Origin: Macrostomum lignano
Lineage: Eukaryota
DNA: 33,515 nt
Reading direction: 5' to 3'
Assembly (NCBI GenBank): GCA_002269645.1
Contig: NIVC01004847.1
Location: forward strand, 1-33,515
Of this stretch, positions 16,845-23,079 are shown piece by piece; the first letter of the stretch is position 1, and the number at the start of each line of letters is the position of its first letter. Position numbers and translations under genes: made by a program. A model generated the notes under the pieces. The model saw only the letters and a program-made list of their open reading frames with translations, ran no database searches and was not told the origin of the DNA.

Positions 16845-16924
16845 ATGGGAACAGCCGGCATGCGTCTCTTAGTGCTCACTGCTGCTCTGCTGCAGCTGGC
16901 CTGCGGACAGATTGACTACGCCAA
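16845..16924 (+). CDS. Channel exon 1: signal peptide
   Basis: [26 protein letters not shown](K); donor AA|gtgagt, phase 2. Confidence 0.8.
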
Positions 16925-19900
16925 GTGAGTTCTGTACCTGTCTGTCTGCCTGTCTGTCTGTCTGTCTGTCTGTCTGTCTGTCTGTCTGTCTGTCTGTCTG
17001 TCTGTCTGCCTGTCTGTCTGTCTGTCTGTCTGTCTGTCTGTCTGTCTGTCTGTCTGTCTGTCTGCCTGTCTGTCTGTCTGTCTGTCTGTCTGTCTGTCTG
17101 TCTGTCTGTCTGTCTGTCTGTCTGTCTGTCTGTCTGTCTGTCTGTCTGTCTGTCTGTCTGTCTGTGTGTAAATTTTGACAGTAACATAATCAAACGCGAA
17201 TGCAGGTAGGAGTACAGAGAGTCTTATAGATGACAGAAAAGGTGACACAAGGTATTAGTTGAAATCAAAACAAACAACAAATCATAGTTATGTTGACCCC
17301 GACAAATCTAACAAAAATTTTTAGCCTCCGCAGTCCCAGGATTCGTTCCTGTCGAGTTTTCCCGCGCTTAATTAGCGCGAATGTCTAATCGGGAAGTGCC
17401 GGTGTCGGATAAATTTTGCGGCCTCATCATCGAGGAGAGGCTGGATGGGGTATAAACTATGCGGGTCTGGCCGATCCCCCTCTTCATCACTTTAATTCTT
17501 GCTGCTCCTAGAAGATTCTGCTTATTGGACAAACACAACAATTTCTAGCGCCGCCAGGGAGCGCTGCTGATGGGTCCTTGGTGAACACAGACAGCTGTAA
17601 GGGGGAAGGCGTGGGGCAGGCAACTCTGACTACCAGCGCTAGGACCTGGCAGCTCCGGACCTGATCCTGGTGATCCATCATGCGCCATGCTGAGGCAGCT
17701 GCCATGTTAATCCGCTTGGATGCTGGTTCGTTACCGGCACTTATCGAATAGACACGGAACCAATTATTGCAGCTTTTTACCTGCCTATCTACCCGCCTAT
17801 CTACCTGCCTATCTACCTGCCTATCTATCTATCTATCTATCTATCTATCTATCTATCTATCTATCTATCTATCTATCTATCTATCTATCTATCTATCTAT
17901 CTATCTATCTATCTATCTATCTATCTATCTATCTATCTATCTATCTATCTATCTATCTATCTATCTATCTATCTATCTATCTATCTATCTATCTATCTAT
18001 CTATCTATCTATCGATCTATCTACCCAGGGCCGCCAGCACCGAGTCAGTCAAGGAGCACATCAGGGCACTGTACATGAACATGGATGTACCTGAGATCGG
18101 TCCTGGAGACGGTGGTGGCGTGCTGAACGTGTCGCTAAGCATTGGCAGCATTCTGAAGCTGGCTGATCATGTGAGGTTTCCTGTTATCTAGTCTCATGCT
18201 GCAGCGCATAAACTCTCAATGAGATTCGCTAAAACAATTCCACAGCACCTGGATCTGGCCTTCACGTTGGATCTGCGCTGGCGCCACAAATTCCTGGACG
18301 TTCTGGTGGACAGCATGGAGGCCATCCCGCTGAATCGCCAGAAGCTTTGGACGCCCCAGTTTGTCTTCGTGAATGTTCAATCGGTCACCGAGGATCAGAG
18401 CTCCCTGTCGCTCAAGCTGGCCGGAATGGACCCGTCGAGAAGGGCTGTGGTGTATAAGGTTTGGTGAGTAGCACCCACTCGGACAGACACTCAATAGAAC
18501 AGATACCCACTCGGATAGACACCCCACTCGGACAGACACCCCACTCGGACAGTTACCCCACTCGGACAGACAACCCACTCGGACAGACACCCCACTCGGA
18601 CAGACAGCCCACTCGGACAGACACCCCACTCGGACAGACACCCCACTCGGACAGACACCCCACTCGGACAGACACAGACACCCCACTCGGACAGACACCC
18701 CACTCGGACAGACACTCCACTCGGACAGACACCCCACTCGGACAGACACCCCACTCGGACAGACACTCACTCGGACAGACAGCCCACTCGGACAGACACC
18801 CCACCCGGACAGACACCCACTCGGACAGACAGCCCACTCGGACAGACACCCACTCGGACAGACACCCACTCGGACAGACAGCCCACTCGGACAGACACTC
18901 CACTCGGACAGACACCCACTGCCCGGCACTCCCGCAGGCACAGAGCCAGGATCCGATGCGATGGTCCCGCAATGCAGCATCCATTTGGCGACATCCTTTG
19001 CGTGTTAATCTTCGAAGAAGGTGAGCTCTGACAAGCTTTGAATTTAGAATTTATGATTACTAAATTGAGCAATACATTCGGACTATCGGCTTGATTTTAG
19101 CAAACCCGGAGAACCAGCGCTCCATCCACATGAGCCTCGGCAGGCGGCACCAGCTCAACTGCACCCGGGTGGACGATCAAAGATACTCGTTCGTCTATCG
19201 GCTGTCCAAGCCGTTCACCGACAATGGTAGCTAGCTAGGTCATGCATTTCACACAGTTATGCATGCACACAAGGTGGCGCTCTGATGTGCCAGCGGCCCA
19301 GGCTCGATTCCAAGTGCAGTCGCATTAATTTGGGGCTAAATTGGAATCTCAGCTTGGCTCTGCTCGTGCAGTTAACGGCCTTGAGGACCGACCCCCAAGC
19401 CACAGTGAAGTGTACATGCCTGAAGATAAATAAAGTTGGGTCGCTGTACACTCCTGTGTGAGTGCCTGCTCAGGGGAGTCGGCGGAATGGGCAGTAATGC
19501 CTCTCGCCAGTTGTGTGACAATTTCGCTTAAAGTGAGACAGGGTGCACAGCACCCCCTGCCTCTAAAAAATAGCCCTGATTTTTTATTCTGCAGGCATGT
19601 ACAGTCTGTGCCTTGGGGGTTGGCCATCATGGCTGTTTACGCACAACTTACCGGCCAATTTTAACGCTCACATGCTCCAAACGAATGTTGAGTAGTTTAT
19701 TGAGTAGTTTGTTGAGTAGTTTGTTGAGCAGTTTATTGAGTAGTTTATTGAGTAGTTTATTGAGAATTTTACTGAGCAGTTTACTGAGTAGTTTATTGAG
19801 TAGTTTATTGAGCAGTTTACTGAGTAGTTTATTGAGTAGTTTAATGAGCAGTTTACTGAGTAGTTTATTGAGTAGTTTATTGAGCAGTTTGTTGAGTAGT

Positions 19901-22900: not shown

Positions 22901-23079
22901 GACAGCGAAATCGTCGCGGTTCGAACCCGGGACGACAGCGTAACGGGTGCAGCCTGCTGGCGATGATTGTGCTGCCAGTGTGGTGGACTCTGTTCGTGGC
23001 CACCTTTTGGACCGCGGTGCTGCTGACCGCTCCGAGCTGTGAGAAGCTGACGGCTGAGTGCTTCAACAGTGCGCTCTGA
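16845..23079 (+). CDS. Divergent Cys-loop (pentameric) ligand-gated ion channel subunit, 7 exons, 469 aa: join(16845..16924,18029..18170,18246..18463,18938..19020,19101..19226,20587..20966,22699..23079)
   Basis: All six introns are GT-AG with matching phases (2,0,2,1,1,0) and the exons total 1410 nt. Signal peptide; loop A-like [10 protein letters not shown]; [15 protein letters not shown] (C-x13-C); three TM helices with [12 protein letters not shown] (compare GlyR PKVSYVKAIDIW); long loop; M4. Confidence 0.88.
16937..17165. repeat. (CTGT)n in channel intron 1
   Basis: Read directly. Confidence 0.97.
17779..18023. repeat. (CTAT)n in channel intron 1, abutting the acceptor
   Basis: Read directly. 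Confidence 0.97.
18029..18170 (+). CDS. Channel exon 2
   Basis: cccag|G GCC...; [47 protein letters not shown]; donor gtgagg. Confidence 0.82.
18246..18463 (+). CDS. Channel exon 3
   Basis: cacag|[14 protein letters not shown]...[11 protein letters not shown]...VYKV(W); donor gtgagt; preceded by a 75-bp intron. Confidence 0.88.
18472..18920. repeat. ~16-17-bp CCCACTCGGACAGACAC minisatellite filling channel intron 3
   Basis: Read directly. Confidence 0.95.
18938..19020 (+). CDS. Channel exon 4: Cys-loop
   Basis: cccgcag|[29 protein letters not shown]|gtgagc. Confidence 0.9.
19101..19226 (+). CDS. Channel exon 5
   Basis: ttttag|[44 protein letters not shown]|gtagct; codons mostly end in G or C; the donor is weaker than the others. 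Confidence 0.78.
19279..19570 (+). mobile_element. tRNA-derived SINE, 5'-truncated copy (channel intron 5)
   Basis: Box B-like GGCTCGATTCC; body aligns with the reverse complement of 21235-21595; ends GCCTCTAAAAAA. Confidence 0.8.
19687..20543. repeat. 12-bp TTTATTGAGTAG minisatellite in channel intron 5
   Basis: Read directly; source of the LLSS/LLNK pseudo-ORFs. Confidence 0.97.
20587..20966 (+). CDS. Channel exon 6: beta10, M1-M3 and start of the intracellular loop
   Basis: cgcag|GC...[17 protein letters not shown]...[12 protein letters not shown]...HSYNG|gtgagt. Confidence 0.9.
20976..21234. repeat. 16-bp GTGTCAGATAGGGTTA minisatellite (intron 6, left of the SINE)
   Basis: Read directly. 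Confidence 0.95.
21235..21595 (-). mobile_element. tRNA-derived SINE, full-length (~361 bp), inserted in the intron-6 satellite
   Basis: Minus strand reads GGGGGCCGTAGCCCAGCGGTAG (box A-like)...GGCTTGATTCC (box B-like)...GCCTCT plus a 10-nt A tail. Confidence 0.85.
21596..22634. repeat. 16-bp GTGTCAGATGTGGTTG / GTGTCAGATAGGGTTA mixed minisatellite (intron 6)
   Basis: Read directly. Confidence 0.95.
22699..23079 (+). CDS. Channel exon 7: intracellular loop, M4 and stop
   Basis: ccacag|TMIYQKD...poly-Q and Arg-rich stretch...[25 protein letters not shown]...stop. Confidence 0.85.
   Translation, partial: TMIYQKDPRSSKCTAITESSDNLDLFGLAEPLPPQPHMPQASTARLTAADRQQLQLQQQQQRHRQRRRQRNRRGSNPGRQRNGCSLLAMIVLPVWWTLFVATFWTAVLLTAPSCEKLTAECFNSAL

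What the first reader, a model, noticed from the sequence alone, without database searches (positions are those of the whole stretch)
16845..23079. Hidden, highly divergent Cys-loop receptor gene broken up by satellite-filled introns
Seven exons join with consistent phases into 469 aa: signal peptide, ligand-binding domain with C-x13-C (18957-19001), four TM helices. The best resemblance is to the anion-channel branch (YVNAMDIW versus YVKAIDIW), but the extracellular domain is barely recognisable. It cannot be placed by eye as a GABA, glycine, GluCl, nAChR or 5-HT3 subunit. Divergent pLGIC expansions have become new sensory receptors elsewhere (cephalopod chemotactile receptors, nematode amine- and proton-gated channels). 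By inference this may belong to an orphan, lineage-specific receptor family. It is the best candidate for undescribed biology in this window.
Basis: partly seen in the sequence, partly recalled or inferred. Interest (0 to 1): 0.8.

Follow-up and report, generated by a model that had tools for sequence, protein, structure and literature searches.

The report
Divergent flatworm Cys-loop receptor gene
The region holds a real seven-exon gene of the flatworm Macrostomum lignano for a very divergent Cys-loop (pentameric ligand-gated channel) subunit, which public databases hold only as fragments, and which belongs to a three-gene family found in no other organism searched; what opens it, and whether it conducts ions, is unknown.

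Summary
Seven GT-AG exons (16845-23079, + strand) join in frame to 469 aa. The protein has a signal peptide, a C-x13-C loop at 18957-19001 and four hydrophobic helices. Introns 1, 3, 5 and 6 are 42-94% tandem repeat.

The window is Macrostomum lignano. Five UniProt entries of that species are truncated or frameshifted models of this locus, and together they use all six junctions. The exact 469-aa protein is not in a collection of 15 billion sequences.

A full HMMER scan of 1.84 billion representative proteins found strong relatives only in M. lignano. They fall into three paralogue lineages, about 45-55% identical. The next hits are ordinary GlyR/GluCl-like subunits at E 1e-5 or worse.

Homology to the pLGIC superfamily is secure (hhalign 98.5%; Foldseek TM up to 0.64 to GABA-A, GluCl and GlyR). 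Every neighbour is on the anionic branch, at 15-22% identity, so it is nobody's orthologue.

It departs from the canon in four ways:
- The classical Cys-loop signature fails.
- There is no Pfam Neur_chan_memb hit.
- There is no PAR motif.
- The M1-to-M3 interval is 7-8 residues shorter than in all 57 comparators.

Most likely it is a subunit of an orphan, lineage-restricted pentameric receptor with atypical gating. Ligand, permeant ion and expression site are untested.

The parts
16845..16924 (+). Exon 1: start codon and signal peptide (aa 1-21, 16845-16907), up to aa 26 plus 2 nt
   Evidence: There is an in-frame stop 84 nt upstream. The exon 1/2 junction peptide is present in UniProt model P0004.
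16925..18028 (+). Intron 1 (1104 nt). It holds (CTGT)58 at 16938-17169 and (CTAT)57 at 17797-18023. A possible cassette exon lies near 17640-17716.
   Evidence: The UniProt model P0008 carries a peptide that I traced by eye to about 17640-17716.
18029..18170 (+). Exon 2: family-specific motif [16 protein letters not shown], the N60-V-S sequon and the start of beta1
   Evidence: The exon 2/3 junction peptide is in P0004.
18246..18463 (+). Exon 3: beta2 to beta6, including LRW (W86) and the LWTP..F.N loop A region (W109, P111, N117)
   Evidence: W86, W109, P111 and N117 are invariant across 65 aligned sequences.
18464..18937 (+). Intron 3 (474 nt), 94% a 17-nt satellite (18474-18917)
18938..19020 (+). 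Exon 4: the Cys-loop, C154-x13-C168 (18957-19001), and beta7 (FEE)
19101..19226 (+). Exon 5: the poorly alignable second half of the extracellular domain, with the N194-C-T sequon and conserved C195
   Evidence: The junction 4/5 peptide FEEANPENQ is in P0008.
19227..20586 (+). Intron 5 (1360 nt). It holds an interspersed repeat copy at 19279-19557 and a 12-nt satellite at 19688-20542.
20587..20966 (+). Exon 6: the end of beta10 with C227, then M1 (about 20631-20711), M2 (about 20718-20771, with conserved His273), M3 with YVNAMDIW (about 20799-20873), and the start of the intracellular loop
   Evidence: This stretch lies in one uninterrupted open reading frame (20553-21014), so the short M1-M3 interval is not a splicing artefact.
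20967..22698 (+). Intron 6 (1732 nt). It holds 16-nt satellites at 20980-21234 and 21598-22634, and the inverted copy of the intron 5 repeat at 21254-21566.
22699..23079 (+). Exon 7: intracellular loop with the conserved SKCT.I.E.SD.LDLF motif and a poly-Q/Arg tract, then M4 (about 22942-23025), a tail with conserved C457 and C464, and the TGA stop
   Evidence: The junction 6/7 peptide is in P0005 and P0013.

Best explanation
This is an intact and probably expressed Macrostomum lignano gene. It encodes one subunit of a lineage-restricted, highly derived member of the pentameric ligand-gated ion channel (Cys-loop) superfamily, descended from the anionic GABA-A/GlyR/GluCl-like branch.

Shown here:
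- The gene structure.
- Homology to the superfamily.
- The family's restriction to three M. lignano paralogue lineages in the databases searched.
- Its departures from the canon.

Inferred:
- The protein enters the secretory pathway. Its extracellular beta-sandwich is N-glycosylated at the two sequons kept in paralogues A and B (N60, also kept in C, and N194).
- It assembles into pentamers, with M2 lining a pore.
- A ligand other than the classical amino-acid transmitters opens it.
- Gating is atypical, because M2 plus its two flanking loops is 7-8 residues shorter than in ordinary subunits and the FPxD core of the Cys-loop is altered.
- The conserved His273 probably faces the pore.

Ion selectivity cannot be called. 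There is no PAR motif and no -1' Glu.
For: Gene model. All introns are GT-AG and the phases are consistent, giving 469 aa.

Organism and prior models. One search names Macrostomum lignano as the source of all the strong hits. P0004 equals exons 1-3 exactly, and P0005 and P0013 span junction 6/7. P0008 carries junction 4/5 and a frameshifted join of exons 3 and 4, and P0013 carries junction 5/6 in a shifted frame.

Constraint. Paralogue B is 45% identical overall. By domain, identity is 56-59% in the extracellular domain and M1-M3, 36% in the intracellular loop and 31% in M4 plus the tail. All three paralogues keep C-x13-C and C195. A and B also keep C227, C457, C464 and the M2 sequence [12 protein letters not shown].

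Superfamily homology. Pfam Neur_chan_LBD scores E 3e-5 for the window protein and 29.7 bits (above the cut-off) for paralogue B. hhalign gives 98.5%, E 3e-15, over residues 17-306. The PDB profile search finds GABA-A delta at 5e-7 and then GlyR. The second AlphaFold model has pLDDT about 85 in the membrane domain. Its Foldseek top 50 are all GABA-A, GluCl or GlyR, with TM up to 0.64 normalised to the target.

Restriction. Only 10 of 1.84 billion representative proteins reach E 1e-3. The six strong ones are all M. lignano.
Against: - No direct RNA evidence was examined. Transcription is inferred from the nature of the public gene models.
- There is no Pfam Neur_chan_memb hit even at E 10, and the LBD score of 24 bits is below the 26-bit cut-off.
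- The classical Cys-loop signature fails in all three paralogues but matches 118 of 118 ordinary subunits.
- The Y242-to-D290 interval is 47-48 residues, against at least 55 in all 57 comparators. This removes part of M2 or of the M2-M3 coupling loop, so the protein might not gate or conduct.
- The M2 register differs between the hhalign, MAFFT and HMMER alignments. The pore-lining assignments are therefore tentative.
- Residues 175-235 cannot be aligned to ordinary subunits better than shuffled sequence. Nothing can be said about loops F and C.
- The AlphaFold alignments contained ordinary subunits, so the fold match is partly circular. Overall pLDDT is only 56-66.
Confidence: 0.6

Rival explanations
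1. The protein descends from a pLGIC but no longer works as a gated channel. It would be a non-conducting receptor, a scaffold, or a silent or modulatory subunit that needs a conventional partner.
For: - The M1-M3 interval is 7-8 residues shorter than in every comparator.
- The FPxD core of the Cys-loop is altered.
- In the MAFFT alignments the segment before M1 reads DEML, where ordinary subunits carry an Arg-rich linker.
- In the hhalign register, bulky Phe would sit at 2' and 13' and His at 9' in place of the gate Leu.
- There is no Neur_chan_memb hit.
Against: M2 is among the best conserved stretches between paralogues A and B. Strong constraint is expected of a functional pore or gate. 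The membrane domain is the most confident part of the model, with pLDDT about 85. Divergent pLGICs with odd pores have often turned out to be channels once the ligand was found; this last point rests on my own knowledge.
Confidence: 0.28
2. It is a decaying or non-functional gene copy, or an artefact of stitching chance open reading frames together between satellites.
For: The locus is embedded in a repeat-dense region and the introns are mostly satellite. The public models of the locus are fragmentary and frameshifted.
Against: - The 1410-nt frame is intact across seven exons, and all six splice sites are canonical.
- The alignment to a 45%-identical paralogue is collinear, with domain-wise differences in conservation.
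- The frameshifts are in the older public gene models, not in this window.
- The junctions recur in independent public models.
Confidence: 0.05
3. It is a fast-evolving orthologue of a known transmitter receptor subunit (GABA, glycine, GluCl, ACh-gated chloride channel) and responds to that transmitter.
For: All detectable neighbours are anionic-branch receptors. MAFFT on 65 sequences aligns R85 with the loop D arginine of the LRQQW motif.
Against: - M. lignano has ordinary GlyR/GABA-like subunits of its own, for example P0087.
- Identity to ordinary subunits is 16-22% in the alignments.
- In the alignments, loop B reads FEEANP where ordinary subunits have ESFGY or ESYGY.
- The Arg alignment depends on the program. 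In the 7-sequence MAFFT alignment the same column is D83.
Confidence: 0.05

Closest known systems
Macrostomum lignano uncharacterised proteins A0A1I8FW04 / A0A1I8IB64 / A0A1I8FBP5 (paralogue B), and the C-terminal part of A0A1I8HIK5 (paralogue C)
   Same: The architecture and family motifs are the same: [31 protein letters not shown]....[HY]P..D.LC and, in A and B, FEEA.P (FEDTHP in C). A and B also share [12 protein letters not shown], the short M2-M3 region and the two Cys in the tail. Identity is 45% over the full length, and 54-58% in the extracellular domain.
   Different: These are separate loci, too divergent to be alleles. The intracellular loops differ: poly-Q/Arg here and poly-His in B. 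Paralogue C is known only as an extracellular-domain fragment fused by the annotator to a ZP-domain gene, with its own internal signal peptide. None has been characterised.
Anionic Cys-loop receptors: GABA-A delta and beta3, GlyR alpha, GluCl alpha (PDB 7qn5_E, 4cof, 6plr, 3rhw/4tnw)
   Same: - The overall fold is shared: signal peptide, beta-sandwich, C-x13-C loop, M1-M3, a long loop and M4.
- Landmark residues are shared: W86, W109-x-P111, N117, P162 in the Cys-loop, E173 and the YV.A.DIW start of M3.
- These are the best sequence and structure matches.
   Different: - Identity is only 15-22%.
- The Cys-loop signature is not met.
- There is no PAR motif; the sequence reads TTR.
- The M1-M3 interval is 7-8 residues shorter.
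- The second half of the extracellular domain cannot be aligned.
- There are extra conserved cysteines: C195, C227, C457 and C464.
- There is no Neur_chan_memb hit.
Other lineage-specific orphan or repurposed pLGICs: the Alvinella 'Alpo' receptors (PMC10338036), and, from my own knowledge, cephalopod chemotactile receptors, nematode orphan LGC groups and vertebrate ZAC
   Same: The evolutionary pattern is the same: a divergent, taxon-restricted pLGIC clade whose ligand cannot be read from the sequence.
   Different: No specific sequence relationship to any of these was found or tested. None appeared among the hits. The chemotactile receptors derive from the cationic nAChR branch (my own knowledge), whereas this family's neighbours are anionic.

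Membership tests
Pentameric ligand-gated ion channel (Cys-loop receptor) superfamily | Extracellular beta-sandwich homologous to Neur_chan_LBD | tested here: met
   Pfam PF02931 scores E 3e-5 and 24 bits for the window protein, just under the 26-bit cut-off. Paralogue B scores 29.7 bits, above it. hhalign against an anionic-pLGIC profile gives 98.5%, E 3e-15.
Pentameric ligand-gated ion channel (Cys-loop receptor) superfamily | Disulfide loop C-x13-C between beta6 and beta7 | tested here: met
   C154-x13-C168 at 18957-19001. It is present in all three paralogues and aligns with the invariant cysteines of 62 ordinary subunits.
Pentameric ligand-gated ion channel (Cys-loop receptor) superfamily | Classical Cys-loop signature C-x-[LIVMFQ]-x-[LIVMF]-x2-[FY]-P-x-D-x3-C (PROSITE-type pattern, written from memory) | tested here: not met
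   The sequence is [15 protein letters not shown]. The pattern fails in all three paralogues and matches 118 of 118 ordinary subunits fetched here. Only the central Pro is kept.
Pentameric ligand-gated ion channel (Cys-loop receptor) superfamily | Four transmembrane helices: M1-M3, a long cytoplasmic loop, then M4 | tested here: met
   Shown by hydropathy and by AlphaFold helices at 232-258, 261-278, 288-312 and 425 onwards, with pLDDT about 85. Foldseek alignments of about 300-340 columns cover most of the 320-345-residue target chains.
Pentameric ligand-gated ion channel (Cys-loop receptor) superfamily | Pfam Neur_chan_memb (PF02932) match | tested here: not met
   There is no hit at E up to 10 for the window protein, and none at E 0.01 or better for paralogue B. 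HMMER and hhalign alignments do still run through M3.
Pentameric ligand-gated ion channel (Cys-loop receptor) superfamily | Canonical length of M2 and its flanking loops (the coupling interface) | tested here: not met
   There are 47-48 residues between the M1 Tyr (Y242) and the M3 Asp (D290). The 57 comparators have at least 55, with a median of 55.
Pentameric ligand-gated ion channel (Cys-loop receptor) superfamily | Pentameric assembly and ligand-gated ion conduction | not testable with these tools
   Only monomer prediction was available, and no functional assay.
Anionic branch (GABA-A / GlyR / GluCl type) | Nearest neighbours by sequence and fold are anionic subunits rather than nAChR or 5-HT3 | tested here: met
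   In the PDB phmmer search up to E 10, every pLGIC hit is GABA-A, GlyR, GluCl or a GLIC-GlyR chimera, with no nAChR or 5-HT3. The profile search agrees. The Foldseek top 50 are all anionic. No formal tree was built.
Anionic branch (GABA-A / GlyR / GluCl type) | Pro-Ala-Arg at -2' to 0' at the cytoplasmic mouth of M2 | tested here: not met
   The sequence is FFDRTTRLF. hhalign places R264 at 0', with the two PA positions deleted. There is also no -1' Glu of the cationic type.
Anionic branch (GABA-A / GlyR / GluCl type) | GlyR/GluCl-type second disulfide in loop C (C-x10-C) | tested here: inconclusive
   MAFFT aligns C195 and C227 with the loop C pair, but the spacing is x31 and about 43 positions are gapped. 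The total length from the Cys-loop to M1 is canonical, at 73-74 residues. Ungapped alignment scores no better than shuffled sequence.
Anionic branch (GABA-A / GlyR / GluCl type) | Orthology to a characterised subunit | tested here: not met
   The best hit outside M. lignano in 1.84 billion representatives has E 1e-5. The best PDB profile hit has E 5e-7. Identity is 16-22%.

The most novel reading that the evidence does not exclude
The three M. lignano genes could define a new pLGIC subfamily specific to Macrostomum or the Macrostomorpha. Its binding loops would be remodelled, its gating interface truncated, and a conserved histidine would line the pore. It would be gated by something other than a classical transmitter, for example protons, Zn2+ or an environmental or reproductive chemical cue. 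Alternatively it would signal without conventional gating.
Probability: 0.2. Interest if true: 0.7.

Novelty: new variant of a known kind. Interest (0 to 1): 0.42.

Why it matters
If these proteins form working receptors, they are a natural experiment in how far the Cys-loop scaffold can change. The Cys-loop core is altered, and M2 with its two flanking loops is 7-8 residues shorter. That bears directly on models of how ligand binding is coupled to gating.

They would also add an orphan, lineage-specific receptor class in a flatworm that can be studied by transgenesis and RNAi, so function can be tested in vivo.

In practical terms, the public annotation of this locus is fragmented and frameshifted. 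The corrected 469-aa model can be added to pLGIC inventories of flatworms.

The interest is moderate rather than high. Divergent orphan pLGIC clades are common in invertebrates, and nothing here shows what this one does.

Tried and rejected
- First word-indexed homologue search with the 469-aa model. It returned a single cluster and missed the locus's own UniProt fragments, probably because poly-Q words swamped the candidate list. The index-free scan replaced it.
- Word-indexed search with a mixed alignment. It gave only 4 proteins and was useless for building a deep alignment.
- Look-ups of the encoding contigs for P0001 and P0004. Nothing was on record. I therefore could not compare the gene structure of the paralogous loci or see RNA-derived contigs.
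- First AlphaFold model from a 7-sequence alignment. pLDDT was 56 and Foldseek TM only 0.26-0.44. It was superseded by the 65-sequence run.
- The reading 'loop F deleted by 22 residues and loop C extended by 21', suggested by MAFFT. I no longer hold it. The total length from the Cys-loop to M1 is canonical, and neither the gapped nor the ungapped alignment of residues 169-242 is trustworthy.
- 'The loop D arginine is lost (D83)'. This depends on the alignment, so I make no claim.
- The idea that the inverted repeat in introns 5 and 6 is a tRNA-derived SINE. ARAGORN and Rfam found nothing.
- Literature searches. None turned up a description of this family. Simanov et al. 2012 (PMC3447372) list only M. 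lignano transcripts matching human GLRA, GABR and HTR3.
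Full report
**1. The observation**

The region was read directly and the exon model rebuilt. The seven + strand exons are:

| Exon | Coordinates |
|---|---|
| 1 | 16845-16924 |
| 2 | 18029-18170 |
| 3 | 18246-18463 |
| 4 | 18938-19020 |
| 5 | 19101-19226 |
| 6 | 20587-20966 |
| 7 | 22699-23079 |

- All six introns are GT..AG.
- An in-frame stop lies 84 nt upstream of the ATG.
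- C154-x13-C168 maps to 18957-19001, and YVNAMDIW is residues 285-292.
- Hydropathy shows a signal-like N-terminus and four hydrophobic segments.
- Tandem Repeats Finder confirms the satellites. Coverage is 42% of intron 1, 94% of intron 3, 63% of intron 5 and 75% of intron 6. The two short introns (75 and 80 nt) are clean.

**2. Organism and existing annotation**

The word-indexed protein search found one cluster, from Macrostomum lignano. Its full-length member P0002 (A0A1I8FW04) aligns collinearly with the model at 45% identity, E 6e-130. Conservation runs straight across every exon junction.

The index-free HMMER scan of 1.84 billion representatives then returned five further entries, all M. 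lignano UniProt records.

| Entry | Length | Relation to this locus |
|---|---|---|
| P0004 (A0A1I8JEP1) | 147 aa | Exactly exons 1-3, stopping where read-through into intron 3 gives TGA |
| P0005 | 124 aa | Covers exons 6-7 across the junction, with one E/Q difference, so an allele or duplicate copy |
| P0013 | 301 aa | Covers exons 6-7 across the junction; frameshifted elsewhere; also joins exons 5 and 6 |
| P0006 | 180 aa | Frameshifted model; starts without Met in the translated 5' flank |
| P0008 | 196 aa | Frameshifted model; starts without Met; joins exons 3-4 and 4-5 |

The window is therefore M. lignano. All six junctions are used in some public model.

The locus is not strictly hidden, because its pieces already carry automatic Neur_chan_LBD and Neur_chan_memb names. 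The exact 469-aa product, and its E319Q variant, are absent from the 15-billion-sequence collection. No correct full-length model was seen.

Whether the public models rest on RNA evidence I could not verify. The partial entries that begin in the 5'UTR suggest that they do.

**3. The family**

Only 10 of 1.84 billion representatives reach E 1e-3 against the profile. The six strong ones are all M. lignano. They fall into three lineages:
- This locus.
- Paralogue B (P0001, P0002, P0003).
- Paralogue C. This is the last 184 residues of P0007. The annotator fused it to a ZP-domain gene, but it has its own signal peptide.

Identity between lineages is 54-58% in the extracellular domain and 57% in M1-M3. 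It falls to 36% in the cytoplasmic loop and 31% in M4 plus the tail. That pattern is what purifying selection on a folded membrane protein would produce.

The next hits are ordinary GlyR/GluCl-like subunits from other animals, at E 1e-5 to 7e-4. So this is a small family, not a large expansion. Within what the databases sample, it is confined to M. lignano. Unannotated Macrostomum genomes could not be searched.

**4. Relation to known receptors**

Sequence evidence:
- Pfam gives only Neur_chan_LBD, at 24 bits against a 26-bit cut-off. Nothing is found for Neur_chan_memb. Paralogue B scores 29.7 bits for the LBD.
- The PDB search lists only anionic-branch receptors. With the single sequence, GABA-A delta scores 5e-5. 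With the family profile it scores 5e-7, followed by GlyR alpha.
- Profile-profile comparison with four ordinary anionic subunits gives 98.5% probability, E 3e-15, over residues 17-306.

Structure evidence:
- AlphaFold on a 65-sequence alignment gave pLDDT 65.5 overall, about 85 in the membrane helices and 70-84 in beta1-beta7. Residues 175-221 had low confidence.
- Foldseek matched GABA-A beta3 and delta, GluCl and GlyR at E about 1e-12, with TM 0.56-0.64 normalised to the target.
- Ordinary subunits were in the input alignment, so this fold match is corroboration and not independent proof.

Membership of the superfamily and affinity to the anionic branch are supported. Orthology to any characterised subunit is excluded for practical purposes, since identity is 15-22%.

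**5. Departures from the canon**

Robust, and independent of any alignment:
- The classical Cys-loop signature fails in all three paralogues ([15 protein letters not shown]; only the Pro is kept). It matches 118 of 118 ordinary subunits fetched here.
- The interval between the M1 Tyr (Y242) and the M3 Asp (D290) is 47-48 residues, against a minimum of 55 in 57 comparators. This stretch lies inside one continuous exon, so the shortening is not a splicing artefact.
- There is no PAR motif and no -1' Glu. The sequence is FFDRTTRLF.
- Four additional cysteines are conserved between paralogues A and B: C195, C227, C457 and C464. C195 is also kept in C.
- Two N-glycosylation sequons are kept between A and B (N60 and N194). 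N60 is also kept in C.

Not robust:
- **M2 register.** hhalign puts R264 at 0' and His273 at 9'. MAFFT and HMMER put His273 at 6'. Both positions are pore-facing in ordinary receptors, so a pore-lining His is plausible but unproven.
- **Loops F and C.** MAFFT's large deletion-plus-insertion between beta7 and M1 is doubtful. The total length there is canonical. Ungapped alignment of that segment scores like shuffled sequence. That half of the extracellular domain simply cannot be aligned, so nothing can be said about the residues of loops F and C.
- **Loop D arginine.** Whether it is kept depends on the aligner.

**6. Mechanism and rivals**

The best explanation is a secreted-pathway membrane protein that assembles into pentamers of the Cys-loop type. 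It would respond to an unknown, probably non-classical ligand, with an altered coupling interface. I put this at about 0.6.

The main rival, at about 0.28, is that the scaffold has lost gating or conduction and acts as a silent or modulatory subunit, or as a non-channel receptor. The shortened M2 region and altered Cys-loop favour this rival. The strong conservation of M2 argues against it.

A pseudogene or artefact, and a fast-evolving orthologue of a known transmitter receptor, are each unlikely, at about 0.05.

**7. Novelty**

This is a new, structurally deviant variant within a very well known superfamily. It is present in public databases only as mis-modelled fragments, and I found no description of it in the literature searched.

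Divergent orphan pLGICs are common in invertebrates. The interest is therefore moderate until a ligand, a cell type or a structure is known.

**8. Surroundings**

The window is a repeat-rich stretch of a flatworm chromosome with ordinary neighbours:
- A GH38 alpha-mannosidase C-terminal exon.
- A mariner-type transposase open reading frame.
- A degraded LTR retroelement on the minus strand.
- A single-exon DXD glycosyltransferase.
- Tropomodulin exons on the minus strand.

There is no second pLGIC copy in the window.

Noticed in passing
window 19279-19557 (+) and 21254-21566 (inverted): Two copies of an interspersed repeat of about 300 nt, 91-92% complementary, lie in inverted orientation in introns 5 and 6. 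They bracket exon 6, which encodes M1-M3. The repeat contains a box-B-like GGCTCGATTCC, but ARAGORN and Rfam find no tRNA. Inverted repeats flanking an exon could favour exon skipping or back-splicing.
   Followed up: partly
window about 17640-17716 (+), inside intron 1: The UniProt model P0008 inserts a peptide (…[12 protein letters not shown]…) between exons 1 and 2. I traced it by eye to this stretch. In this window's sequence the reading frame hits a stop soon after it. It may be a poison cassette exon, or an artefact of the older, error-rich assembly.
   Followed up: partly
window 4833-5900 (+): An intact 355-aa open reading frame for a mariner/Tc1-type transposase (Pfam HTH_48 and DDE_3).
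   Followed up: partly
window 6810-11195 (-): A degraded LTR-retrotransposon-like element. There is a gag-like open reading frame at 10467-11195. An open reading frame at 9176-10399 has a reverse transcriptase match (Pfam RVT_1). Further pol-like pieces are split over several frames (8790-9257, 8323-8838, 8091-8420, 7678-8178). A 15-nt satellite (6907-7389) sits in the last open reading frame, 6810-7826.
   Followed up: partly
window 11350-12558 (+): A single-exon 402-aa open reading frame with an N-terminal hydrophobic anchor and a DXD glycosyltransferase sugar-binding region (Pfam Gly_transf_sug, E 1.7e-9). It lies 4.3 kb upstream of the receptor gene. The exact sequence is not in the protein collection.
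   Followed up: partly
window 611-1228 (+): An open reading frame matching the C-terminal beta-sandwich of glycosyl hydrolase family 38 (alpha-mannosidase). It is probably the last exon of a gene that starts upstream of the window.
   Followed up: no
window 31753-32217 (-) and 28976-29284 (-): Tropomodulin exons on the minus strand (Pfam Tropomodulin, E 9e-38, for the first). The second open reading frame has no Pfam hit; by eye it looks like the leucine-rich C-terminal part.
   Followed up: partly
window 12948-14334, 23145-24125, 24559-25455, 27914-28961, 30209-31709: Very long tandem arrays lie between the genes: (ACTG)344, a 14-nt unit x70, a 22-nt unit x40, a 10-nt unit x107 and a 19-nt unit x81. 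The satellite load is therefore a property of the whole region and not of the receptor gene's introns in particular.
   Followed up: no
protein residues 195, 227, 457, 464 (window 19161-19163, 20616-20618, 23038-23040, 23059-23061): Four cysteines outside the Cys-loop are conserved between paralogues A and B. Two are in the lower extracellular domain and two in the short extracellular tail after M4. In ordinary receptors that tail lies near the end of beta10 and the Cys-loop. Disulfides between tail and extracellular domain, or between subunits, are conceivable but untested.
   Followed up: no
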